From positions 5,870,778 through 5,934,777 of the forward strand of contig NC_134030.1 in the NCBI RefSeq assembly GCF_964204645.1: a DNA stretch of 64,000 nt, read 5' to 3'. Under the pieces are notes generated by a model that saw nothing but the letters and a program-made list of their open reading frames with translations, was not told the DNA's origin and did not search any database. The DNA comes from Tubulanus polymorphus (taxonomy: Eukaryota > Animalia > Nemertea). The number at the start of each line of letters is the position of its first letter. The stretch's first letter is position 1. Positions 10,701 to 52,118 of this stretch are shown piece after piece. A program made the translations under genes and the position numbers.

Positions 10701-11124
10701 AATGTTTTACAAAACATCGGTTAAAGTGAATTCTTAACAATGTTGCATAGCACACTAGAAGTTGAACACAATGGAATAATTTCTACATTCAATACAGCTT
10801 TTAACTGTACTGCATCACACAGTGATTCATTGGCGCTGCCAAATATTCACTCGTGATAACGCCAATATGTGCGCCAAACGTTAAATGAGATTTTCATCTG
10901 TGATTCTATTTTCTATATTGAGATGTTGGTGATCATCATCGATCCAAATTGCATAGTTTTTCGTAGTCCGGCCCGCAGCAATTGTTGTCAGGTTATGATT
11001 GTCTAGTGCTGCCGCTATAAATTACATAAGCGGTGCACATATGAACTAACTTGATGCTACAATATTCTTACTGTGGCGTGCGACTAATATGTTAGTTCGC
11101 GTATTCGCCGTCAACGATATGTAC

Positions 11125-37378: not shown

Positions 37379-40300
37379 CTACGTTGTTGAATCAATGCCT
37401 GCGCTTAAATATCCTAAATTTAGCATCCCTCGGTCGTCCATAGCTGGCGGTTGTTCAACTTGCGTCAAGTCGACAGTGTCTTCCGTTCTGCTATAGAGGG
37501 CGTTGTTGAACCCCACCGCGTCCGGGCCGGCAATTTGTCGGCGCCGTAAGAAGATGACAATACCGACAATAACCGCTACTAGCATTATCATACCAACACA
37601 AATTCCGACGATCATTCCGGTTTCTTTCCTCACGTCTGTAGTAAAGAGAAATAATGTCAAGGGTGTAAACGAGTACATATCATACTAAACAGACCCTTCG
37701 ACAAAGAACAAATTTGATTTTCTATACCTTGTGTTTGGCCACCGGCAACTGGTCCGTTAGTGGGCCCAACAGTGGCTCGTTTGGTGGTAGTTTTGATAGG
37801 TTTTGGCGTTGTAGCTTTCGTAACGGGGGTTGGCAGAGAAGTAACTGAAATGATACGCGTTTAGTACATTTAAAAAAAAAAGAATAGTACAAGCATACGC
37901 ACGATAATGGAACAAAATATAAATGTTTAACCACGCACGTTGGATTGCCGGCTTTTGACATATGTAAAGTCGATAGGTTGTACACGATTCAGGGTACCAT
38001 TGACCACTGCTCTGAGCCATAGATCCACATGCCTTGCTCGAACTCTGTGATTTATTGGGCTCGCCACTAGCCCAGTTTTTATAGTCGATTTTCGTATCAT
38101 CCAGCCATGTCCAAGGCCCTATTAAAAATAATAGTGATGCCGTATAGTAAACGATGTGATAAAGCATTTCAAAACTGATCACTCGTTTCCTTAGTGGTTT
38201 ACTAACTCAAAAGCTGCACCATACATACGTACCGTCTTTCTCTTTGGCCAAGCCGATCCAATAATTGTAGGACCGTTTGACTGATTTGAAAACATTCACG
38301 AAGAAATTCGTCACTTCCTGTGAATGAATGGATGCTAGTTCGGCTCCGTGATTCATTTGACACAGAAAACTAGCATACGCTATCGCCTTAGTACTCGAGT
38401 TGGAAAAATAATAACACATGTTGTTATGGTAAATCCAGGGATATTTACAGCGATCCGGGTGTACAGGTGCAACTGACGGTTTAGTGGCTGAAAATTATGA
38501 AACAGAACTTTGTGATGATGAAAAATCTACATGGTTATGAACGCACAAATCAGACTGAAAGTAAACTCTACCGAATTCATAATGACAATACGTTGATCAA
38601 CGAAGCTTTTCTTACCTTCGGTCGTTTTACAAACGAATGGAAATTTCTGATTACAATCCGTTTTGTTCCATTTGCCGTTGGCCATCATTGACACGCACTT
38701 CCAGTCCGTCCTCGAAGACGGTTCGTTCGTACCCCAGTTCTTGTAGATGAACGGCCATCCGTCTATCCACCCAAGCCTATCGAGACCCTGAACGACCAAT
38801 AAACATCGGTTAGTTGTTAGTCAACATTCGATGTAACGAAGCAGGTGAAATATACATGTAAATATTACCATCCTAGCGTTCAATCCGATCCAGAAGCTCG
38901 TGACGTTCATTATTTCTGATATATAATGAACGTAGGTTTGTTCGAATTGATCAGTGATCGAAACTAACTCCGCCTTCGGGGCTTCTTTATCCGAGCAATG
39001 ACGATTGGCTTGTTCCCAGTTCATCTTTTGGACGATTACCTTGTAGCAACTTTGACGATAGCGGCTGTACCCGTTTTTACACGTCGATGATGTCGGTTTA
39101 GGTGTCGGTAAGCTGGGGTCTGTAATTGGAATTCATGCAATAGATTCTAGGTGAAGAAGGCCCAGATAGAGTCCAGTAATGGTGGACTCAAGTAACACGA
39201 GATCCTTGGCATTTGCCTAAGAAGAAAGGAGATTTCTATGCGTAAAAATACCATACCCTTTAGACCGGAGCATACAAATCCATTTAAATCGGTACAGGTT
39301 TTCAATCGCCAAAGCCCGGCACCCACGGGGGATGAAACCATCTCAGCACATGCATACTGAAATGTTAGTACGAGTGCAATGTATGAACAAGCCCAACGTT
39401 TCCGAAATATGGACACAAGAACTATGATTCTTACGGTATCATATTTGATTCCGCTTCTGGTTGGCTGCGATTTTTGCCAGTACGTGACCCTCGTTCGTTT
39501 ATAGTTGATCCAGCTGTACGTGTACTTTTTTCGATTGTCCGACATTCCGATCCAAGCGTTCGCTGTCAAGTTAACCAGTAAGGTCGTCACCAAAGCTGCG
39601 AAAACCAAAATTAACATTGTATGATACTTTTAGAAATCAAACTAATGTAGAATACTAAAGACAGTGTTGCTCTGATTTCTGAATGAAGTTAAACGCAACT
39701 ACGGCTGTTGGTGTTACGGCTATTTATTAATATCCATTATTCACGAAATGAATTACATTAGAAAACTAAGTGATGATTAACGAGATAATGTAGTTCAAGT
39801 TGATGGACACTTACATTGTTCATAATCGGATTCTATGACCATTAGATCGTATTTTGTGCCGAAGGTCCCGCATTTTTTTCTCGCATTTGCCCAAGTTTTC
39901 AGCTCAGATAAAACCTTGATACATTTATTACCTGCAATCAAAAATACCGTTCTCACATCATTTGATAACAACCCGGCAGGAAGCACCTACTCTTTTTACG
40001 TAACGAAGTTTATTCATTTACCTATGGGTACAAAGTCGGTTGGACAGTTCCCGACAATTGGTGGTTCAGTCGGTGGTAGGATGGTGGCGAAGCTGTCGTT
40101 GGTTTTTTTACAAATGAAATTTCCAGTGTACGTACAAGATGCAGTACTCCAAACACCTGCGAATTTGAAAAAGTAACAAAAATCTTATCAACCAGATGAA
40201 AGATAAGAACTAGAATCCATTTGAGATTAGAGAACGATAATCTATCTCTAGGCCTTTTTGAACACTTAAAGTACGGATCCACCCTCCGCAATTCCTCCGA

Positions 40301-43300
40301 AAGTTCTCAAATAATTCTGTTGTTATTTCCATCTTTGATCTAATGATTTAGATTTCTTAATTTAATGATGCAAAAATATAGTGATCTTTGTTTCTCCATT
40401 CGTTTCAATTCTATTCATCACATTTTCACTCCTTTTTCTATTTTTCCGCAGTCCAGCCAAGATTTCATGTGGAAAATAGTCGGCTTGTGATTGAATCTCA
40501 TAAAGATAAATGGTATGTTCAAGTTTAATCCACGTATATAAAACATATGATATAATACAATATATGTTATCTATTCCTGTGACTCTATTGTAAATTTTGT
40601 TTACGAAATAAATATATATATATATATTACAAGTATAAGAAATTTCCATTTCAAAACTCCTGATATGGGAAAAATCTTTTTTTTCTCTATCTTGTTTATT
40701 TTCTCTTCGCCCTCCCATGTTTCTATAAAAATCCCAGGCCTTATGAGACTCGAGTGTATGGACCAGAATAGGCAAACGGTTACCTAACGTTTTGCTCATG
40801 CGGACGCATTGGCTGCTTGACGTAGAACTGGGTTGTCGTCTGTCCCAATTAGTATAAAGTAACGGCAGTTTATCACTCCATCTGAAACGGAAACAGCTCA
40901 GTTACAGCATATCTAAATTTCATTTTCTCTGACATCTCTGAAATCATATTTGTCCATAAGATAAAACATACCTTCCCGGTCCATCCCTGTACGAGAGTCC
41001 AACCCAATATTTACTGCTTCCGCTGGTTAATTTGCCAATCTACAAAGTAACGGTTGATTTAAGATTAGAAGTTCAAAAAGAAACATAATCCGGAGTAGTT
41101 TCGCCGAATACAGACCATGCCCAAAACAAAGTTCAATTCAGTCTGTGAATCGATGCTGGTTAGATGACCGCCATAACCATTACATAAATCTTCAGCCTTA
41201 GTCCAGGTGGTACGCCGGCTACTTCCATACGACGTCGTCGCATAATAGCACATACCATCGAAATGAATCCATTTTACGGATGCGTCCTTGCTGTGGCAAG
41301 TAGGAGCTATAAATTTACGAAACATATTTGTATATCTGTTTGGAAATTAGCAATTAGTTTTGTCGATACTTTGATCATCATTGATCATAAAAAAGGAAAT
41401 GTATGTGATTGATTCCTCAAAATGATAAAACCTACACGTGTCACCCGTTGGCGGTACTTGTGTAACTGGCGGCTTGGTTCCTATAAAAAAAGACAGATAG
41501 CCGTCGAGATATTAATTGCAATATAGGCCTAATGACTTTGTATTTAACGACTGTGTATGATGTATTTACCAGGAGCGACACCACAGATGTAATAGCGAGA
41601 TGTGTGACAGTTGATATCATTCCATTTCATACTGTTTCCGTACATTTCTAAGCATTCTTCTTGATTGTTAAAACTGTTTGGTTCACCGCTTTGCCAGTTC
41701 GTATAATCCCAACTCGAACCATCGCTCCACTGCCACGCTAAAAATTGATTCTAATATACTGCAGAAACTTGCTGTAAATTGATATATGCTGTATGTAAAG
41801 TATTGGGTCGTCTTGAATATCTGATTGATCAAAGAAGACTGACGACTTTCCCCCGAAATCCTGTTCAGCTGCATAAAAACTTGCTATAACCGAAGCAGAA
41901 GTTATCTTTTACTTACTATTATTGAATTGGGGATCTTTGGAGTTTCCTCCAATCCAATAGTTACTGCCCCTGAAAATAAGTTATTAGTTATTAGAACCCA
42001 TTGTACCATTTGCTCTATGGGTACTGTTTAGTGCATTTAATTGTTAGCGTTATGGTTTGTACTCTCAGCCTAATCTATGGAAAAGCACTACACTTAACGT
42101 ATTCATGAGTCACATTAAATTCCATTAAATTAAATCACATGCGATTAATGATTATGATGATACATAAACACTACATACTACTCTAGCAGGCTTTTATTCT
42201 GTTGGAAATTTGTAATTGTGCCTTAATAATTCAAAATCATTCAATCAAGATACATCAAAATATCAAAAACCGTTATATACAAAGTAGAATTCAAATTCGA
42301 CATTCGACCATCTCAACGTTCAGCCCACCTGCAAATAGCTTAATTTTTTAAAATCAAAGCAGCTTCATAACTTACCAACGTAGGCCCAATGTAGAACGAG
42401 AAGGTATCTTTTTATGAAATGATGCCAGGTCCCCGCCGTATTTATTTTTGCATATTAATCGAGCTTCGTCATATGTGTAAATGGTGTTTCGTCGCCGAAA
42501 TGCCTGTAGGGGGAGTAGCGTTAGTGTATTGAAGAAAAGCGAAAGCAATAGATACAAAGTCAATTCAAAATCCACTGAACTAACACCAGGCTCCGATTCC
42601 ACAGACCAGACTGCTTCCACAATAGGCTTTGAGTAATTTGTAAGATTGTTTCGTTTTATGGTCATACTAGTTTAGTGCGGACTATTCTAAAAGCCTTGAC
42701 TGTGGAATCGCGGATATGATGGATCCTGTACGACATGATCATGAGATTTACTAATGATATATAATCAACAGTTTGGGTTAATCGAAGAAGAATCAACGCG
42801 ATTGGTTAATAAAACTGAGAGACAAATAAGCGCAGATACAGCTAAAGTTCTACCATCACCGCTGAGACTGAAGCTAAACTATAGCGCCACCTACAGTGCG
42901 AACTGATACTCACGAACTATTTGGAACAAGGTCTCGAAAAAATGTCGTAAACTGCGCATTACCGTGGAGACTGATCAGATGTCCCCCGTAGTTTGAGAAG
43001 CAAAAATTCTCTGCGTCATCCCAATTTTGCAGATCGGTAGTGAACGCCTTTGGAAACGATATTCAAACGTTGATTACGAAGGCAATTTTTATGAACGGAT
43101 ATAGAAATTATGTTGGAGCCGACCACATGTTTCGAGACAGCTCATCTCAGATATATTTCTATCCAGAAAAAATCGCGAAAAAATAACTACACACCTTATA
43201 ACACATGCCGTCGAAATATTTCCATGCTCTTGGGCAGTTTTCTCTGGGGTGTGTTGTAGGTGCTGGCGTAGTGTAATCAGAATCCGGCGCTTCGCAAATG

Positions 43301-46300
43301 AACGGCGCCGTTTTGGTACACATCCTGTCAGCCCACAGGTTCTGTTTTATCGGTTCCGACTGAATGACGGCGCACATCGGCTTATTCGACCCTATATCAA
43401 ATACACAGACATTCATCAGTTACGACGTATATATTGTTACCGTATTCCAAGGCTTCCTGCTACATTGATATATATATATACGTACCATCATGAGAGACGT
43501 CCCAATAGGTATGCGTTGCACGACTACCATCAGTCCACTTGTATGTATTCGACGTCCAGGAAGTGTATTTTCGGTCGTTCGTGAAACCGATCCAGTACGA
43601 AATAACATCGTCTCTGATCAATGATCCGACGAACGTATTCTCCATGCTTGCAAATAGAAAATATAGTATACTTCACAACAACTTCGCAGTGGAATTACTA
43701 AGAACAAGGACATCAATACGATTGCATTCCTCATGACGGAAAACCTATTGAATTTTTGATTTCACCGTTTCTTACCGATCTTTGATTTTTACAAGATGAC
43801 CTCCGTTTTTACGACAGTAACCCTCTGCATCGTTGAAAGTGAATTTGTCCGAATTCACACCATAGCACGATTTGCCCCATTTGTGCCTGTATAACTAGAA
43901 CATAAATAAGTATATACGTGTATATGGTATTTATATTTACAAAATGGCAATAAATCTTGGAAATAAAAGGACTTTTTCATTGTTTCTACTTGCATCCAAT
44001 GTTTATGGCTTGATACGAGTATGAACTGATCAACGATATTCTGGCAATTGTCACTTGAAAAAACAATATACGTTTTTCGGTTCAATCAATTACAACTAAA
44101 GTTTCATATGAACTGACCATAGCTGGGCATCCTGTTAATGTCGAAGGTGTTGTTTGAATAGATACCAATTGCAATCCTGTCTGGCAAATGTATCCGACAT
44201 TGGCTGAACTAGAGCTACAATCCCTCACCGAGAAATCACTGTACTAGAATACAAACGGGAAATACGGAAGAATCTCGTCTGATCTAACTATAATTTGAAA
44301 GCATCATTTATAATTTTGCTTACTTTCTTCATTACGACACAATTAGGTTCGTCCAAAATGAATTGCGGCTCGTTTGTCATCCACTCGGTGTAGCTTATAT
44401 CGGAGCCATCCACCCATTGGAAATATTGAGGATCATCCTTAGCGTTAAGTCCGATCCAATATTGAGATCCTTCAGAAATATTTGATATGCTTGTTTCAAA
44501 TACAGAGGTAATAACGGCTTCTAGGTATTCACTAATTCATGGCATAAATTCAATGTACCTGAACTCATGATGAGGTCTTGAATAAACGTTTTTTTGAACC
44601 GATCTTCTATCGTTAGTAGATTACCACCAGATTTCACACATTCAGCCTGTGCCGATTCCCACGTTAATGCTTTGCTGTTGATCTGGATACACTGGTTTTT
44701 CGAGTATCTGCTCCAGGCTTTCGGACAACCGAGCATATTACCTGAATAAACAAAAATAAACCAAAATTGGGATAAAATTGAATACACGAGATTCAGGTGT
44801 ATTGATATTGAAACTAACCCGTCGAGGTGGTGGGAAGTGTGGGTGGTGGAACAGTCGTTTTCGGGACACTTGATGATTTCTTGCATACATATCCTAATTG
44901 ACTTTCACAATCGAAGATTTTCCACTTAGAAGAAGACGGAGATATGGCTCCGCAACTGTAACCACTTGATTTAATCGAAGGCTGTCCTGAAAAATTCGTC
45001 ACAAGGTTATTAGAAATTTTTAGTTGTCTGTCCAGAATTTCGTGACATTGTTTTGTAACAAACTATTTCTCACCGGTTTCATAATTAAAGTAAGCCATCG
45101 GCGACGAGTTTACCCAAGAGAATTTAAGAAATTGCTTTGAGAACGCCATGTTGTACAGCGCTGTCCACAGCCAAAGATTCGGCAGTCCCCGCATGCGCCC
45201 TAAAATTACGAAAACGTAATAATTGCTGGGATAACTTTCTTAACAAATCTACATTCTAAACAATCAGTAAAATCGGCACAAAATGTTACCAGCGATATAG
45301 ATTTGTTCACTGGGATCCAAAATGGTCAGCAAATCACCACCGGCATTTAAACAATTGCGACGAGCATCGTTCCATTTGGCAGACTGTTGTATGTTGAACT
45401 GGTAGCAATATTGCTCGTGGTGTGGGGCTGTCTCCCAGCCACTGCCGCATTCTTTAGACGCTACAAAAGATCATTTTACCTGCTGCATTTTACGATTCCT
45501 CTCGTATATCAGCATACAAACTTAAAAGACATCGTGTCGTCTGTTTGCTCATATATTGCGGATCTAGACTTTTCCGTAATGTTTTAACGATATATACGTT
45601 TTTTATCCGTCAAGGTATACAATTCATGTCATATTGGAAATATAGTGATAGCGAGGTACCTGTAGTCGTAATAACTGGTGTTGGCAATACGGCAATCCTC
45701 ACTGAAACAACAATATGTTATTAACATCGATATTGTTATCAACGGTTGATCAGTTCCAACAACAACCAAAAGAAGTGATCTTTCTAGAATTAGTGCTAAG
45801 AGTTTTCACTTCACTTACCAGCCGGTTTTTCACAGATGAAACCGACTTTCTCAGTACAATTCAAGTGATTCCAACGACCAATTTTACTACCGGGCCCGAA
45901 TACATCAACGCAGTTCTCATCATCGGGCACATTTTGTTCATTGTCGTCCCAGTTTGTATAGACCGCCTGAAAAGTGTTTTCAGTGCAGTGATGATGTAAA
46001 ATTACATGTAAAATTCATTGCCATTTTTATTTTCAGAAAAAATCAGGGAAGAAACAAGGTTTCTCTTGTCCCACTGGATAATTGTGACGCTTATATCATA
46101 TAAGTTAGGGTAGTTTTGAAGGGAATGAATTCATCATTTGAAGATATGATTGTAATTCCTACACCATTTCGGAATCAAAGAATTAGATCTACTGTTAACG
46201 TAAAAGCATAATGGATTACCGCTTGTTCTTCGTAATTCCAAGTCCATATCTGATTTCCTTGATCATCTTCTATCCTATGCAAACCGATCCACATAGGAGA

Positions 46301-49300
46301 TGGAATCTTGGCTGAAAAAAATTACCATGTTAAGTTTAAGAGCTCCATTTCGAAGCCATCAGCGCACGTCAGAAAATACACTACTCCCTTCAAAATTCAA
46401 CGTGCAGGGCGCCTAACAAAAATGTTAGAGAAGATATTATTAACCATTACGTTCGTAAGATATTTTCCACTTTTTTTAGATTCAAAGAGAGTTCGAAAGG
46501 CTTTTCACGGGAACAGGAAAATAAATGCATGTTTAATTGGCACTGTGATGACACGATCGCCGGCAAACTCCACCAGATTTATTTGGATCTATTTCGGTTA
46601 CCTGCAATGAAAGTCATCGTATCTTCGTTTCGAATAGTCGCCAGTCTGGATCCGCGCTTCTGACAAAAACGCTGCGCTTGTGATTGCGTTACTGATGTCG
46701 TGTTGAATAGAAAACAGGCGGCATGGTCCGGGAAAACTTCCCAGCCAGAATCGCACGAATATTCGACTGCAAGAACATTTATGCAAGACAAATATGAAAC
46801 CCTAATGAGCGGCTTGCATGATAAAGTTGTGTTAAAACTTGCTCGTAACGGCTCCGAAAGATAGTCACTTACGTGGTGGTGTGGGTTTATACACAGGAGA
46901 TTTGTAAGATGGAATCTGACAGACGAACGGTTGACTGACGTAACAGTCCGGTCTCAGTGACCAGCCACCATTATCTGCAGAAAAATGTAAAGGGGAAAAG
47001 AGGAATGGCGGATATTCTGAACATGGCTAGAACTAAATCAACGCAAAATCATTGAAAATTCACATCGACATGCTATATGTTACATACCGATATCCATTTG
47101 ACCACAAAGGTCATTAGATACATAAGCCGGTTGTCCATCTAACCAAAACGTTGCTGCAAGGGGACTACCGTCAACCCATTGAGCCTTACCATTTACATTT
47201 GCTAAACAAGGAGGAGGTTTTTTAGCATGCATTAAGATACATACATATATACATTCATACATATATACATCAAAAAGAAGGCTATAACTTGGTATAAGTG
47301 ATTTCAGGTAATGAAATGACAATCAGATAGGGGTGACATGCAGACTTGCACGATATCGGTACACACTTGATCTCAAGTGAGAGATTGATTACATGTATAA
47401 AGCAGTCAAGGATGTGTCGCTGAGATAAGAATGCCGCGATCATTGCAAATCACTTTCAATTCTCCGATGTCATAATGTTGGGTCACAAAGGAAATTGGAT
47501 AACATGCATAGCACATTCACAGTCGGTTTTGCATGCAAATGCAAGATCACATAAAGATTTTATTTACGCTGAATAGACATTTGGCCACAGCCGATTGTAT
47601 TTTTGTTTATGCTCATAAGCCAATTGGTGTAGGTAATGTTCGTTCCCTGAACCCATGTTAGCTCGCTGTCTGGTTCATCCTCTGGTGTATGAGAAAGAGA
47701 TATCATCAACTCGATTTGTAACATTTGTAACACTTATTTTGGTCAAGATTCCTCTCAAAAATGACGTTTGGAACTGGTCAACAGGGCTCTATGTATGGAT
47801 TTGTATGGTTAAGTTACCTCGAGGCCGTTAAAATGGTATACTTACTATGTATGCCCAGCCAGATATCAGTATACCTCACACTGTCCCCAATACGGTTTAG
47901 TATGTTGTTAATTATGAACTTCTGTTGGTCATTGCTGGAAATACAAATAATCATGAGACAATTGCGTCCGCGATCGTTGTTAGAATTAGAAATGATACTT
48001 ACGATTTGATAATCAGATGGTCAGCGTTGCGGTCCTTGCAAAATGTATGCGCGTCCGACCAGGAGGCAAGTTCGCCTGTTGTAGCGTGCAGCATGTAGCA
48101 CTGGTCTTTATAGGTTTGCCAGCCATCATCACAAGCCCCTGAAACAATAAAACATAGAATTGGTTAGTATTTAAGAACCGATTCGCCATATAGTAACAAA
48201 ATATATTTCGATTATTATCTCAATATTATTTTGAAATGTATTAAAACATAGATGAATCTTGGTTGGTTTTAAGATTTGGAAGGCTATTTCTTAAAAGGTT
48301 ATCCACTAGTATTTATCTGATATATGTGAAACAGGTAAATAGATAATGAAAGAAATTCAAATGGCATTTCCCCTACCTAAACTCTTCTGGCAGATGAATC
48401 TATTGAATGCCGAGCACTCTGATGTAACCCACGTCTTGTTTTCATTGCTAGCGTCACTTGTCAGATATACGCAATTCTTCGTTTTATCGGTTCTGAAAAA
48501 TCATATATATATACAACAGTGCTAAATGACAGAATTCATGGGACCTATTCAGTATGATCCTCATTTACGCAGTCAGTGTCTAAACCGTATCTATAATACG
48601 TCCATGATCTATCTAAGCACATACCCTGGCTGACCATCTATCCAGTAGACGTTAGTATTATCCAATGACTCTCCTGACACCCAGACCTGTTGTAACCAAT
48701 ATGCGTATAAAGTAGCACATGATAGCTGCATAATGGAGGGTATCCGAAATATGGCAGAATGTGGAAAAACTTTCGCAATAAGCGTTGTATCATTTAGGGT
48801 GGTTGGTCGTCTTTACCTTTGAAGTACTTGTATAATTCAAACCAATCCAAACGTTGGAATTGCTTCCATAAACAATATCGTGAACGGCCGTTTCGTCATT
48901 GTAGTTTAATATTGACACCAGGTTTGCGTTTTCCGTTTGACATTGAGCCCTGGAAAAATAGGGATTATTTCTAATTCAATTTCTGCGGTTCAAGTTCCAG
49001 TACCAAAATCATGTATGTTATTTACATTTTCAAAACATAAGAAATTGTTTCGTTATTGCTGAAAAACAGATTTTCAATCCGTGCTTAAGTTGTTATCATA
49101 CACGGTGTTTTAGCATTACGTAACTACTTTAATTTCTGTGTTAAGATATGGCCAGTTTCGTTAATTTTTTGGCACTCTGATCTGCCGAGTGATTTGGTTT
49201 TGAGAGTCGAACTCATTCATCACTTACTTTGCCGAATCCCAAGTACCCTTTGATTCCATTGAATATTTGTAGCAGCGATCGTCGTAAATCTGCCAACCGT

Positions 49301-52118
49301 TCGCAAAGTCGCAGTGTTTTGGGGCATCTGCAAACGAACGAAGCGTACACTGAATATACAGTTCAATGTGAAAACAGTGCAATCAATTTCAGAAAAGACG
49401 TACGTACTTTTCTTCCGCTTGCAGATGTAAGAGAAACCATTGTCACAATTGTTATCGTTCAGTTTCCCGTTTTGATCGATTTCTCCGCAATACTCGTTGT
49501 TGTTGTGATTATTGGGTTCATTCACTTGCCACATCCTGCGAAGGCATCATCAATTCAAACAATTAATCAACGATTACAATGCTCAGTTGATAGAACACGT
49601 TTTCAACCTTGGCCTTCAAGTTTTAACTTTTGGAAGGCATTAATCGATTATCATCCGAAGCATATATGCTCTGGAGATAAAAGAAAATAAGATAAGGTCT
49701 GATCATTCAGTATTCATATTATGTTATATGTAGCCATTTAGGGGATTTACCCATTTGGGTCTTTGCCGTTCTGTCCTATAATGCTCATATCAGTGGAGCC
49801 GGTTGACCAGACGAATGTTTGGCTTTTACTAGGATCATGCAGTCCCGTCCACCATCCTGCCACGTTATATTTTGTGTAATAGTTTTGTATCTGCTGCGGC
49901 AACCAATTCTAAAAAATAAGGTGTGCAAGTGATTTGGAAAACGACATTATTTCAAAGTTTATAACCCATCAAACAGCATTGTCGCACTGAACTGAAATAA
50001 TATATACTTATACAACTGACGCGTGAAAATGTTTATAGATGGCGATTGATTGAATAACAGACCTTTTCAGTTGGATCTGTTATATACAAGAGATCAGCGT
50101 CTTGTTTCATACATCGTTGGCGAGCAGATTCCCAAGTGGCTACCTTCCTCCTAAACAAGTAGCAGTTGTCGCTGTTATCCAACCAACCTCGAGGGCAATC
50201 GGACGCACCCGTTATTCCTAAATATAAGAAAATATGTACATTAACTCCTATTTGTGATTTCGAATATTAGATTGAATGTAAGAATGGTCATTGTCCTTCT
50301 AACGACCATAGTTTAAATGACATGATAACGGAATTAAATGTTGCATTCCGTTTCCGCGAAATTCTTTTTAAGTTTAACAGTTGCGAATAGTGTGGCCTCA
50401 TAAGATAATGTTAAGTATATCCGTTCGTCCTCAGTGGATTTTCCGTTCGTACTGTGTATGTACATGGTGATTTTATCAACGTCGTATCAGTCAAGTAGAA
50501 AGGGGCCTGGACGTGTTGAAGCTTCGGTTCATATATGCAAGCTATACGGATTTTTTGCGTAGATAAGTATCGTTACAGTACTGAATGATATGTTACTTTT
50601 TTCTTCTGCCTCAATTCACCAAGCAGGCCAGAATACCTCTATGTTCATGAAGTGAAGGACTAGTGTACAACAAGCGTGTTGGCCTCGCCCGTGACTATGG
50701 AACTGGATTAAAATAGTTTGCTTCAAAGGTTGAGAGCTAGCGAGCTTGGGCTCCAGTGCCTATCCCTCCTAGAGCGCGAGGCTCGTCGCTCATCTGTCGA
50801 TTCTCGCGAGCGACTAGTGGCACGATTTCAATTACGCACACGTCGTCGTCACTCATAAACGAAACCGGGACGCGATGAACAGAAATTTAAAAAAAACACC
50901 ACTGGAATGAACTAGAGAAAGATTACCGGAAATTATCTAAGCCTGTAAGAATTCCTATGCGTCATATATATGTCGCTTATAAACAGACAGAAAATATAAA
51001 CAGGTCACACTGATCATTTTACTGAACACACATCATCTTTCCTAGATCCGGTATAACATATTACTGGAAAGCCAAAATAAATGACTATTCGCGCTTTTCA
51101 CAAAGAAGTAAATGGTCGTAGAGCGTCGTATAGGTCACTGTCAAATTACAAACACTTCCAGGAATTGATGAAGCCTTTCTTATTAATTACTTTTAAATCA
51201 GCGTCTTACGTCCGTTGTAACGCCATCCTATTAATGTCGCTGCTCTCAATTTATACCAAAATGAATTCATTTTACAAAAAAAAAACAAGAAAATTAACAA
51301 AATAAACAAACGACACAAAGCGTCATGTAGACATTACCATTATCATAATTACCACTGCTCTCAATAACGCCAGCATTTTTTTTTTCAAAAAAAAAATTTT
51401 GCCCAATCTAACTCAAATTCGATGAAAATATCATTCTTTGTAATGCAAAAATTCTTCATAACGCTTTATATTTTTCATCATCAGTGAAATTTATAAACGA
51501 CTTGTTTTTCTGTAGTTACGTATGTCGTTTTTACAAATTGTATAGTTGCCTGATTTCGAAATTGTTACGTAAAAACGATCTATTCTAATTTGACGACCAG
51601 AGAATTAATGTACGGATACAGTATTACTCTGTGGTGCCTATTTTCATTTTTATTTGTGCTAGTTCATTTTTCACATCGGTGTTTCATTAACCTTCTACAT
51701 ATATCTATATATCTATATAGTCTGATCTGTTCCCGATATTGCGTAGAATTAGGCGACTTGGTTTTGCGGTGCTGTCGCTGTAGTGTAGCTGTCCCGCGCC
51801 AGAAATAAAATATTTCAACACCACAATAATGTATATGAAAAAGAATTCGAAACATACGTATCTATCTGTATAAGCTATGACAGTGACATTTTCGTAGTGA
51901 ATTGAAGCATCACAAAATAACAAATGGCTATTCTAATTTGAGCCGTGTCCAATTTTAACGAGACCCGCTGCCAATGATAATAATCCATTAAGTCGGCCTG
52001 TATTTTATGCATCTAATTATAATCCAATTCAGGTAATTTTAATGCAATAATTTGTTGACACACACTTACCAATCACGGAGCATATTGTTATCGCGTACAA
52101 AAATAACAAAAACATCAT
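37379..52118 (-). CDS. Macrophage mannose receptor-like type I membrane protein with 12 tandem C-type lectin domains (no ricin/FNII domain seen)
   Basis: Signal exon 52118-52070 (MMFLLFLYAITICSVIG), then ~40 small exons from 50217 down. These give 12 units of C..GW...CY / W..A...C...L..I / WIGL / W..W / C...W....C....FIC with P/T-rich linkers. Thr/Pro stalk exon ~37844-37728. Last exon 37636-37379 has a TM (MIVGICVGMIMLVAVIVGIVIFL-RRR) and FNNALY, like the MRC1 FENTLY endocytosis motif. Confidence 0.92.
42376..42503 (-). CDS. Lectin CTLD8 alternative exon B (128 nt, phase 0-2)
   Basis: actaac branch point, cccctacag|...|gtaagt; encodes AFRRRNTIYTYDEARLICKNKYGGDLASFHKKIPSRSTLGLR(W). Confidence 0.82.
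42914..43047 (-). CDS. Lectin CTLD8 alternative exon A (134 nt, phase 0-2)
   Basis: tttccaaag|...|gtgagt; encodes AFTTDLQNWDDAENFCFSNYGGHLISLHGNAQFTTFFRDLVPNS(S). Confidence 0.82.
47088..47201 (-). CDS. Lectin CTLD3 alternative exon B (114 nt, phase 1-1)
   Basis: ttgtttag|...|gtatgt; encodes TNVNGKAQWVDGSPLAATFWLDGQPAYVSNDLCGQMDI. Confidence 0.82.
47568..47681 (-). CDS. Lectin CTLD3 alternative exon A (114 nt, phase 1-1)
   Basis: caccag|...|gtaaat; encodes KDEPDSELTWVQGTNITYTNWLMSINKNTIGCGQMSIQ. Confidence 0.8.

What the first reader, a model, noticed from the sequence alone, without database searches (positions are those of the whole stretch)
42376..43047. Second mutually exclusive exon pair, in the canonical EPN/WND domain CTLD8, with a frameshift lock
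Seen: after the exon ending FDGMCYK (phase 0) come two homologous exons. Both start AF and end in phase 2: AFTTDLQNWDDAENFCFSNYGGHLISLH... (134 nt) and AFRRRNTIYTYDEARLICKNKYGGDLASFH... (128 nt). Either joins correctly to the GSNYWIGG exon at 41969, but including both or neither shifts the frame. A is acidic/neutral and B is strongly basic (RRR, KNK, KK). CTLD8 has a full EPN..E..WND calcium site. Inference: splicing flips the charge of the alpha1/alpha2 face of a main mannose-type domain. With the CTLD3 pair this gives up to 2x2 receptor isoforms, a small Dscam-like diversification scheme that I do not recognise from vertebrate mannose receptors.
Basis: partly seen in the sequence, partly recalled or inferred. 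Interest (0 to 1): 0.8.

Follow-up and report, generated by a model that had tools for sequence, protein, structure and literature searches.

The report
Spare alternative exon in worm lectin receptor
A ribbon-worm gene for a 12-domain lectin receptor carries a second, intact but unannotated version of one exon of its only canonical sugar-binding domain; the available RNA uses only the first version, so the alternative form is well built but not yet shown to be made.

Summary
The gene is the Tubulanus polymorphus 'macrophage mannose receptor 1-like' gene: minus strand, 42 coding exons, 12 C-type lectin domains (CTLDs). Between exon 25 and exon 27 lie two alternative exons, A (42914-43047, 134 nt) and B (42376-42503, 128 nt). 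Both run from phase 0 to phase 2 and have AG/GT splice sites. Either one alone keeps the frame; both together, or neither, gives an early stop.

Spliced RNA contigs from two independent studies join exon 25 to A and A to exon 27, skipping B. All 18 joints found match the 18 annotated introns, so none involves B. The RefSeq isoforms also use A only.

B is nevertheless not decayed:
- It scores almost as well as A against a profile of 14 homologues (111.9 against 117.3 bits; 73.7 with neither exon).
- Third codon positions between A and B are saturated, while first and second positions stay about 50% identical.
- B has a stronger donor site than 36 of 41 real donors.
- B is unique in the genome.

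The charge flip is real: net -4 for A, +7 for B.

The Lineus ortholog has a single 134-nt exon here, but has an annotated mutually exclusive pair in another domain.

Verdict: a credible tandem-duplicated alternative exon pair of a well-known kind. A is the default; use of B is unproven. The scan noted a similar twin exon (CTLD3) in this same gene before.

The parts
37379..52118 (-). Coding part of the gene: T. polymorphus 'macrophage mannose receptor 1-like' (XP_074652342.1). 42 coding exons, 1892 aa: signal peptide, 12 CTLDs, one membrane span, short tail.
   Evidence: Exact mapping of P0001 on the window; name and accession; 12 Lectin_C hits and nothing else; hydrophobic span 1813-1837.
43195..43391 (-). 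Constitutive exon 25: end of CTLD7, linker and first strand of CTLD8. Ends in phase 0.
   Evidence: RNA joints 43392-43485 and 43048-43194; translation.
42914..43047 (-). Exon A (exon 26 of the public model), 134 nt, phase 0 to 2, net charge -4. This is the form seen in RNA.
   Evidence: Joints 43195>43047 (run X2) and 42914>41969 (X2 and X5); present in P0001; weak acceptor (2.9 bits, rank 7 of 41) and middling donor (5.35 bits, rank 10 of 41).
42504..42913 (-). Intron between A and B, 410 nt. It is long enough to be spliced out, so steric exclusion does not apply.
   Evidence: Coordinates; compare the 50-nt spacer of the Lineus pair.
42376..42503 (-). Exon B, 128 nt, phase 0 to 2, net charge +7. 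Unannotated, with an intact frame and a CTLD-type sequence. Not seen in RNA.
   Evidence: (weak Lectin_C hit like A). Donor 10.1 bits (beats 36 of 41 real donors) and acceptor 4.4 bits (beats 13 of 41). Unique in the genome.
41970..42375 (-). Intron between B and exon 27. In the observed transcripts the whole span 41970-42913 (944 nt, second longest of 41 introns) is removed.
   Evidence: Joint that skips 944 nt in X2 and X5; intron lengths.
41917..41969 (-). Constitutive exon 27 (53 nt, phase 2 to 1): the WIGG strand shared by both forms.
   Evidence: Joints; translation.
41570..41737 (-). Constitutive exon 28: the sugar/calcium loop of CTLD8 with EPN, Glu and WND.
   Evidence: Translation; motif scan; Lectin_C hit at 5.8e-10.
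42887..42896 (-). Ten bases 18-27 nt downstream of the donor of A, complementary (9 of 10) to the pyrimidine tract and AG of B's acceptor (42504-42513). A candidate masking stem only.
   Evidence: Inverted repeat I9; present in the minimum-energy and centroid folds; pair probability about 0.9, but 21 of 200 shuffled introns offer an equally good partner.

Best explanation
Exons A and B are a tandem-duplicated pair. Each encodes the same piece of CTLD8: the end of beta1, alpha1, beta2 and alpha2. CTLD8 is the only domain of this 12-CTLD membrane receptor with a complete mannose-type calcium and sugar site. Because both exons are 3n+2 long, only transcripts with exactly one of them are productive. 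Double inclusion or double skipping gives an early stop, presumably cleared by nonsense-mediated decay. A is the default exon in the sampled animals (shown). B has been kept as a coding exon by selection since an old duplication in the Tubulanus lineage (inferred from sequence). B is most likely used instead of A only in a restricted cell type, stage or condition, where it would replace an acidic surface opposite the sugar site with a strongly basic one (inferred, not shown). The sugar site itself, encoded by exon 28, is unchanged. The swap would therefore alter domain packing or a secondary, polyanion-type contact rather than the primary sugar specificity.
For: Same position, phases and first residues, and either exon restores the frame. 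No other CTLD of the gene is cut at these points, but the Lineus ortholog is: a 134-nt exon, phase 0 to 2. Among 24 CTLD segments, B's best match and A's joint-best match is Lineus CTLD8, and A and B share a one-residue insertion between the Cys and the GG that Lineus and the other homologues lack. Profile of 14 homologues: 117.3 bits with A, 111.9 with B, 73.7 with neither; none of 277 neutral-decay decoys and none of 192 intron-ORF decoys reached B's score. The first half of B fits the family better than the first half of A. B matches 13 of 19 consensus positions against 11 for A, and is no further from the outgroups than A. Codon-position identity between A and B is 50%, 52.5% and 17.5%. 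B's donor beats 36 of 41 real donors, and a CTAAC branch-point-like motif sits about 18 nt before its AG. B lies in the second-longest intron; the only other intron of the gene that holds a hidden CTLD-like exon is also one of the four longest. The Lineus ortholog has RefSeq isoforms that differ by a true mutually exclusive pair. Known homologous pairs can be this diverged, have 3n+2 lengths, depend on decay, and have a rarely used member (PMC4165533). Three quarters of human events of this kind are tissue-specific (PMC9741552).
Against: No RNA evidence for B. Contigs of two RNA runs from two studies show only A, and the 18 joints found equal the 18 annotated introns in the stretch laid. In X2 the B region is covered only by one unspliced contig at depth 22, against about 300 for the spliced contigs. 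The 90% cluster of the public protein holds only two isoforms, both with A. Word searches found no protein fragment with B. The alpha2 part of B fits the family worse than that of A (about +9 against +18 bits), contains a proline and a glycine, and lacks helical spacing of its hydrophobic residues. The conserved Trp of alpha1 is a Tyr in B. Lineus has no second copy, and no closer species could be examined. A +7 segment lies outside the range of the 14 homologues.
Confidence: 0.55

Rival explanations
1. B is a silenced relic. It was once an alternative (or the original) exon, is no longer spliced in, and simply has not yet accumulated disabling mutations.
For: Only A appears in RNA contigs of two studies and in RefSeq models. 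B's alpha2 part is atypical and its charge is outside the family range. There is no copy in Lineus.
Against: There is no sign of decay. The frame is open. The donor beats 36 of 41 real donors, and the acceptor has a good branch-point-like motif. B's profile score is as high as A's in the conserved half, and B is equidistant with A from the outgroups. A dead exon with such strong sites would risk harmful double inclusion, so its splice sites should be selected against.
Confidence: 0.28
2. B acts mainly as a poison exon. It is included together with A to shift the frame and send the message to decay, which tunes receptor level rather than making a second protein.
For: A+B gives a stop inside B, far upstream of the last junction. 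B has strong splice sites. Such products would be degraded and so invisible in contigs.
Against: A poison exon needs no coding conservation, yet B keeps the CTLD core residues, the phases and the exact homologous boundaries. No A-B joint (42914>42503) was found.
Confidence: 0.1
3. B is not an exon at all: a chance open frame with chance splice-like signals, or an assembly duplication.
For: The A-B DNA identity of 40% is low. A alone did not find B in a six-frame search of the genome or in tblastn of the introns. Both Pfam hits are weak.
Against: The decoy tests put B more than six standard deviations above the neutral-decay decoys and about nine above chance frames. B has exact positional homology and a shared insertion with A. 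It is unique in the genome and is present without differences in contigs from a second sample.
Confidence: 0.03

Closest known systems
Homologous mutually exclusive exon pairs with lengths not divisible by three (e.g. C. elegans F30F8.9 exons 4a/4b; Kuroyanagi et al. 2014, PMC4165533)
   Same: A tandem pair in one intron interval with the same phases. Lengths are 3n+2, so double inclusion or skipping shifts the frame. Identity is low (the worm example: 41% nt, 17.9% aa, 683-nt spacer; here 40% nt, 30% aa, 410-nt spacer). Some members of verified pairs are expressed at very low levels.
   Different: In the worm cases both single-inclusion forms were shown by RT-PCR and dependence on decay was shown in smg-2 mutants. 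Here only A is seen in RNA and decay is untested.
Annotated mutually exclusive pair in the Lineus longissimus ortholog (XP_064644549.1 / XP_064644550.1; L009:10691-10822 and 10873-11004)
   Same: An orthologous 12-CTLD receptor gene with closely conserved exon structure, in which a duplicated exon inside a CTLD gives two isoforms.
   Different: The Lineus pair sits at the end of CTLD6. Both exons are 132 nt (divisible by three), 64% identical and only 50 nt apart, so exclusion is probably steric rather than by frame. Both forms are in RefSeq. Lineus has one exon at the CTLD8 position.
Human U2AF1 exons 3 / Ab (Kralovicova and Vorechovsky 2016, PMC5224494)
   Same: A duplicated exon pair in which the exon with the better splice signals is the less used one, held down by sequence and structure upstream of its 3' splice site.
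   Different: A different gene and clade, with a mechanism shown by experiment. Here the masking stem is only a prediction at chance level.
Drosophila Dscam1 exon clusters
   Same: Mutually exclusive choice among duplicated exons that alters a surface of an extracellular receptor domain.
   Different: Dscam1 has 12, 48, 33 and 2 variants, with docking and selector RNA pairing. Here there are two candidate pairs (at most four forms), no docking system was detected, and there is no evidence of stochastic choice.
Vertebrate mannose receptor family (MRC1, MRC2/Endo180, PLA2R1, LY75)
   Same: A type I membrane protein with a long row of CTLDs, of which one carries the canonical sugar site. The CTLD8 model superposes on mannose receptor CRD4 (TM about 0.8, 30-33% identity). 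The short tail has a Phe-x-Asn-x-x-Tyr-like motif; the comparison with the mannose receptor's endocytosis motif is from my own knowledge.
   Different: No N-terminal ricin-type domain and no fibronectin type II domain. It has 12 rather than 8-10 CTLDs. I know of no twin exons described in the vertebrate genes, and the searches found none.

Membership tests
Mutually exclusive exon pair derived from tandem exon duplication | Two neighbouring exons between the same constitutive exons that are homologous to each other | tested here: met
   Same boundaries and first residues. Both match Lineus CTLD8 best among 24 CTLD segments (A jointly with its own CTLD9). They share a one-residue insertion. Identity is 28-30% aa.
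Mutually exclusive exon pair derived from tandem exon duplication | Each exon alone preserves the reading frame with both neighbours and has usable splice sites | tested here: met
   Phase 0 to 2 for both. AG/GT at both, with position-weight scores within or above the range of the 41 real introns.
Mutually exclusive exon pair derived from tandem exon duplication | A mechanism that forbids double inclusion and double skipping | tested here: met
   At the sequence level, 134 and 128 nt are both 3n+2, and A+B or neither gives an early stop. Degradation of such products by nonsense-mediated decay could not be tested.
Mutually exclusive exon pair derived from tandem exon duplication | Transcripts with each exon alone are observed | tested here: inconclusive
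   A alone was seen in two RNA runs of two studies. B was not seen; the 18 joints equal the 18 annotated introns. Only contigs could be laid, and these drop rare variants. The tissues of the runs are unknown. RefSeq has A only.
Vertebrate-type mannose receptor family (MRC1-like) | N-terminal cysteine-rich ricin-type domain followed by a fibronectin type II domain | tested here: not met
   A Pfam scan of the 1892-aa protein gives 12 Lectin_C stretches and no other domain. CTLD1 starts at residue 24, directly after the signal peptide.
Vertebrate-type mannose receptor family (MRC1-like) | Row of 8-10 CTLDs, single membrane span, short cytoplasmic tail | tested here: inconclusive
   There are 12 CTLDs, not 8-10. 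The membrane span (1813-1837) and a 55-residue tail are present.
Calcium-dependent mannose-type carbohydrate-recognition domain | CTLD fold with EPN, a Glu eight residues on, and WND at the principal calcium site | tested here: met
   The motifs are in exon 28. The model has mean pLDDT 88.6 and matches solved CRDs, including mannose receptor CRD4, at TM about 0.8. Sugar binding itself was not tested.

The most novel reading that the evidence does not exclude
Ribbon-worm multi-CTLD receptors repeatedly and independently evolve twin exons inside single lectin domains. Lineus has one at the end of CTLD6, with both forms annotated. Tubulanus has candidates in CTLD3 and CTLD8. In Tubulanus the CTLD8 switch would turn the back face of the receptor's only canonical sugar-binding domain from acidic to strongly basic in a specific cell type or on challenge. 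That would be a small, splicing-based diversification of an innate-immune-type receptor in a phylum where nothing of the kind has been described.
Probability: 0.3. Interest if true: 0.6.

Novelty: new member of a known kind. Interest (0 to 1): 0.38.

Why it matters
If B is used, the public annotation of this receptor misses a protein form in which 43 residues of the one canonical sugar-binding domain are exchanged, with an 11-unit charge swing. Most duplicated-exon substitutions are conservative (PMC9741552), so so large a charge swing would be unusual. Together with the annotated pair in Lineus and the CTLD3 twin in this gene, it would show that lectin receptors of ribbon worms diversify by exon duplication and exclusive splicing. 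It would also give a simple system for asking what the non-sugar face of a C-type lectin domain does. If B is never used, it is an ordinary unannotated relic. Even then, it shows that an intact frame and good splice sites do not prove use.

Tried and rejected
- **Protein fragments containing B.** A word search with the 99-aa open frame around B, scored on B alone, found no candidate. A search with CTLD8 of the public protein (131 aa) also found none. The fragment collection therefore says nothing either way.
- **Other copies of B in the genome.** Protein and DNA searches found only B itself, so B is neither a repeat nor a recent copy from a paralogue.
- **DNA-level repeat between A and B.** None was found; the pair is too diverged.
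- **RNA structure.** The 431-nt fold of the A-B intron is no more stable than shuffles (z = -0.41). The stem that masks B's acceptor has pair probability 0.9, but 21 of 200 shuffled introns do as well. I keep it as an idea, not as evidence.
- **Runs X3 and X4.** These turned out to be DNA-like: their contigs run through introns, break at a GATC site and carry chimeric ends. They give no RNA information.
- **A third hidden exon.** I looked in the other long introns (1852 nt and 627 nt). tblastn of all exon peptides against all introns found only B and the CTLD3 twin.
- **B as an internal first exon.** The frame upstream of B is open for 56 codons with a Met. I rejected this reading: the hydrophobic stretch there is just the translated pyrimidine tract, the product would lack beta1, and X2 shows only flat unspliced coverage.
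- **Literature.** Searches for mutually exclusive exons in C-type lectins returned nothing specific.
- **Left out.** The joined isoform-B domain has no reference, so it was not sent to any search, fold or complex tool. It was assembled only inside scripts, from window coordinates, for local scoring. No structure or electrostatics of isoform B could therefore be computed.

Full report
**What is there.** On the minus strand, an exon ends at 43195 in phase 0. Two candidate exons follow. Exon A is 42914-43047 (134 nt) and exon B is 42376-42503 (128 nt). Each starts with Ala-Phe after an AG and ends in phase 2 before a GT. Each joins in frame to the exon that starts at 41969. A followed by B gives a stop inside B, and skipping both gives a stop in the next exon.

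**The gene.** A search with the upstream exon (65 aa) found a 1892-aa protein that contains exon A verbatim. It is XP_074652342.1, 'macrophage mannose receptor 1-like isoform X2' of the ribbon worm Tubulanus polymorphus. Its only other public isoform (X1) differs by three residues at position 597.
- I mapped it exactly onto the window as 42 coding exons, running from 52118 to 37379. Exon A is exon 26.
- The protein has a signal peptide, 12 C-type lectin domains and nothing else in Pfam. It also has a membrane span (1813-1837) and a short tail. It is therefore mannose-receptor-like, but lacks the ricin-type and fibronectin type II domains of the vertebrate family.
- By a motif scan, CTLD8 is the only one of the 12 domains with EPN, Glu and WND.
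- A predicted model of CTLD8 with exon A has mean pLDDT 88.6. It shows that the exon encodes the end of beta1, alpha1, beta2 and alpha2. The model superposes on solved lectin domains, including mannose receptor CRD4, at TM about 0.8.

**RNA.** Six runs hold the region, and I laid four of them on 40350-46300.
- X2 (2024) and X5 (2014, a different study) are spliced RNA. Their contigs skip introns that have GT..AG ends on the minus strand.
- Both runs join 42914 to 41969, which removes 944 nt including B. X2 also joins 43195 to 43047.
- Fifteen joints are listed and three more are not shown. The stretch contains exactly 18 annotated introns, and the 15 listed are the first 15 of them. I infer that no joint involves B.
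- In X2 the B region is covered only by one unspliced contig (41940-42942) at depth 22, against about 300 for the spliced contigs.
- X3 and X4 are DNA-like and carry B without differences.
- Contigs drop rare variants and the tissues are unknown. This shows that A is the main form. It does not show that B is never used.

**Is B a real exon or a leftover?**
- *Homology is positional and specific.* No other CTLD of this gene is cut at these points. The Lineus longissimus ortholog is, with a 134-nt exon in phase 0 to 2 that starts with Ala-Phe.
- *Closest relatives.* Among 24 CTLD segments of the two species, B's best match and A's joint-best match is Lineus CTLD8. A and B share a one-residue insertion that all the other homologues lack. 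The duplication therefore happened in the Tubulanus lineage, and A keeps the ancestral length.
- *Age.* A and B are 30% identical in protein and 40% in DNA. Identity by codon position is 50%, 52.5% and 17.5%. Silent sites are saturated while replacement sites are held, which is the pattern expected if both copies stayed coding. The sample is only 40 codons.
- *Profile score.* Against a profile of 14 homologues that excludes this gene, the domain scores 117.3 bits with A, 111.9 with B and 73.7 with neither. Copies of A mutated to the same divergence kept an open frame in 277 of 2000 trials and never reached B's score (maximum 96.9). The best of 192 stop-free intron frames scored 91.5.
- *Halves of the exon.* The first half of B fits the family better than that of A. 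The alpha2 half fits worse, at about +9 against +18 bits.
- *Distance to outgroups.* B is no further from the outgroups than A and matches 13 of 19 consensus positions, against 11 for A.
- *Splice signals.* B's donor scores 10.1 bits, above 36 of 41 real donors. Its acceptor is average, with a CTAAC motif about 18 nt upstream. A's acceptor is weak, at rank 7 of 41.
- *Copy number.* B is unique in the genome.

None of this looks like decay. But sequence cannot tell a currently used exon from one that was silenced recently.

**Mechanism.**
- The frame lock is shown at sequence level, and it is the commonest arrangement for such pairs. In C. elegans, 14 of 19 clusters with lengths not divisible by three depend on nonsense-mediated decay. 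Verified pairs there can be as diverged as this one, and some members are rarely used (PMC4165533).
- A is dominant although B has the better signals. This resembles human U2AF1 exons 3 and Ab (PMC5224494) and suggests that B is repressed.
- A 10-nt element just downstream of A's donor can pair with B's pyrimidine tract and AG, with pair probability about 0.9. However, 21 of 200 shuffled introns do as well, so this is only a hypothesis.
- The swap leaves the sugar loop (exon 28) untouched. It changes the opposite face from net -4 to +7, which is outside the -7 to +3 range of the homologues. I infer an effect on domain packing or on a secondary polyanion contact. This is untested.

**Context.**
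- The Lineus ortholog has RefSeq isoforms that differ by a genuine mutually exclusive pair in another domain. Its two exons are 132 nt each, 64% identical and 50 nt apart.
- An intron scan of the Tubulanus gene finds exactly two hidden CTLD-like exons: B and the CTLD3 twin already noted by this scan.
- Twin exons therefore arose at different places in the two lineages. This fits the convergent evolution and the tissue specificity reported for such events (PMC9741552).

**Limits.** Only one reads call was allowed, and it returned contigs only. No related palaeonemertean genome was in reach. The joined isoform-B domain has no reference and was not sent to any search or fold tool. It was built only inside scripts from window coordinates for local scoring, so the structure and electrostatics of the B form were left out.

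**Verdict.** This is a new, unannotated candidate member of a well-known class, tandem-duplicated mutually exclusive exons with a frame lock. One form is proven in RNA; the other is supported by sequence conservation only.

Noticed in passing
L009:10691-11004 (Lineus longissimus OU343004.1): The Lineus ortholog has two RefSeq isoforms of equal length (1893 aa) that differ only in residues 866-902. They come from two 132-nt exons that are 64% identical and separated by only 50 nt. This is a textbook mutually exclusive pair, probably enforced by the short spacer, at the end of CTLD6.
   Followed up: partly
window 47572-47682 (intron 10, 47202-47845): A scan of all exon peptides against all introns recovers a CTLD-like open piece in intron 10. 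This is the CTLD3 twin exon already noted by the scan. The public model uses 47088-47201. My reads call did not reach this region.
   Followed up: partly
window 40157-40783 (intron 32) and 40365-40901: The frame of exon 32 stays open for about 140 codons into this 627-nt intron (a 179-aa open frame with no Pfam hit). Run X2 has an unspliced contig over 40350-40811 at depth 26. It also has loose ends at 40582 and 40616 whose 30-letter consensus (of about 240-255 loose letters) lies on nothing in the window. This could be an alternative end, an insertion polymorphism or a repeat.
   Followed up: no
G000 contigs C6 (about 18.6-22.1 Mb), C9 (about 2.2-5.1 Mb), C12, C8, C10; examples L002:1345-2736 and L005:373-1716: At least 150 places in the genome, many in tandem arrays, carry an intron-free open frame, most of about 450-490 aa. 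In the two examples scanned, the stretch near the C-terminus (residues about 376-421) matches the start of a C-type lectin domain, and the first 375 residues have no Pfam match. This looks like a very large lineage-specific gene family.
   Followed up: partly
P0001 and P0013 (window gene and L009): By a motif scan, only CTLD8 of the Tubulanus receptor keeps a full EPN..E..WND site. The Lineus ortholog keeps such a site in 8 of 12 domains, and its CTLD8 has QPD (galactose-type) instead of EPN.
   Followed up: partly
window 45451-45460 region (exon 17 acceptor): The two public isoforms X1 and X2 differ only by three residues (Ala-Ser-Lys) at residue 597, which suggests a 9-nt alternative acceptor at exon 17.
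   Followed up: no
window 42594-42612 and 42692-42710: A 19-nt inverted repeat (84% complementary, 79 nt apart) lies inside the A-B intron and forms a hairpin in both the minimum-energy and centroid folds. No function is assigned.
   Followed up: no
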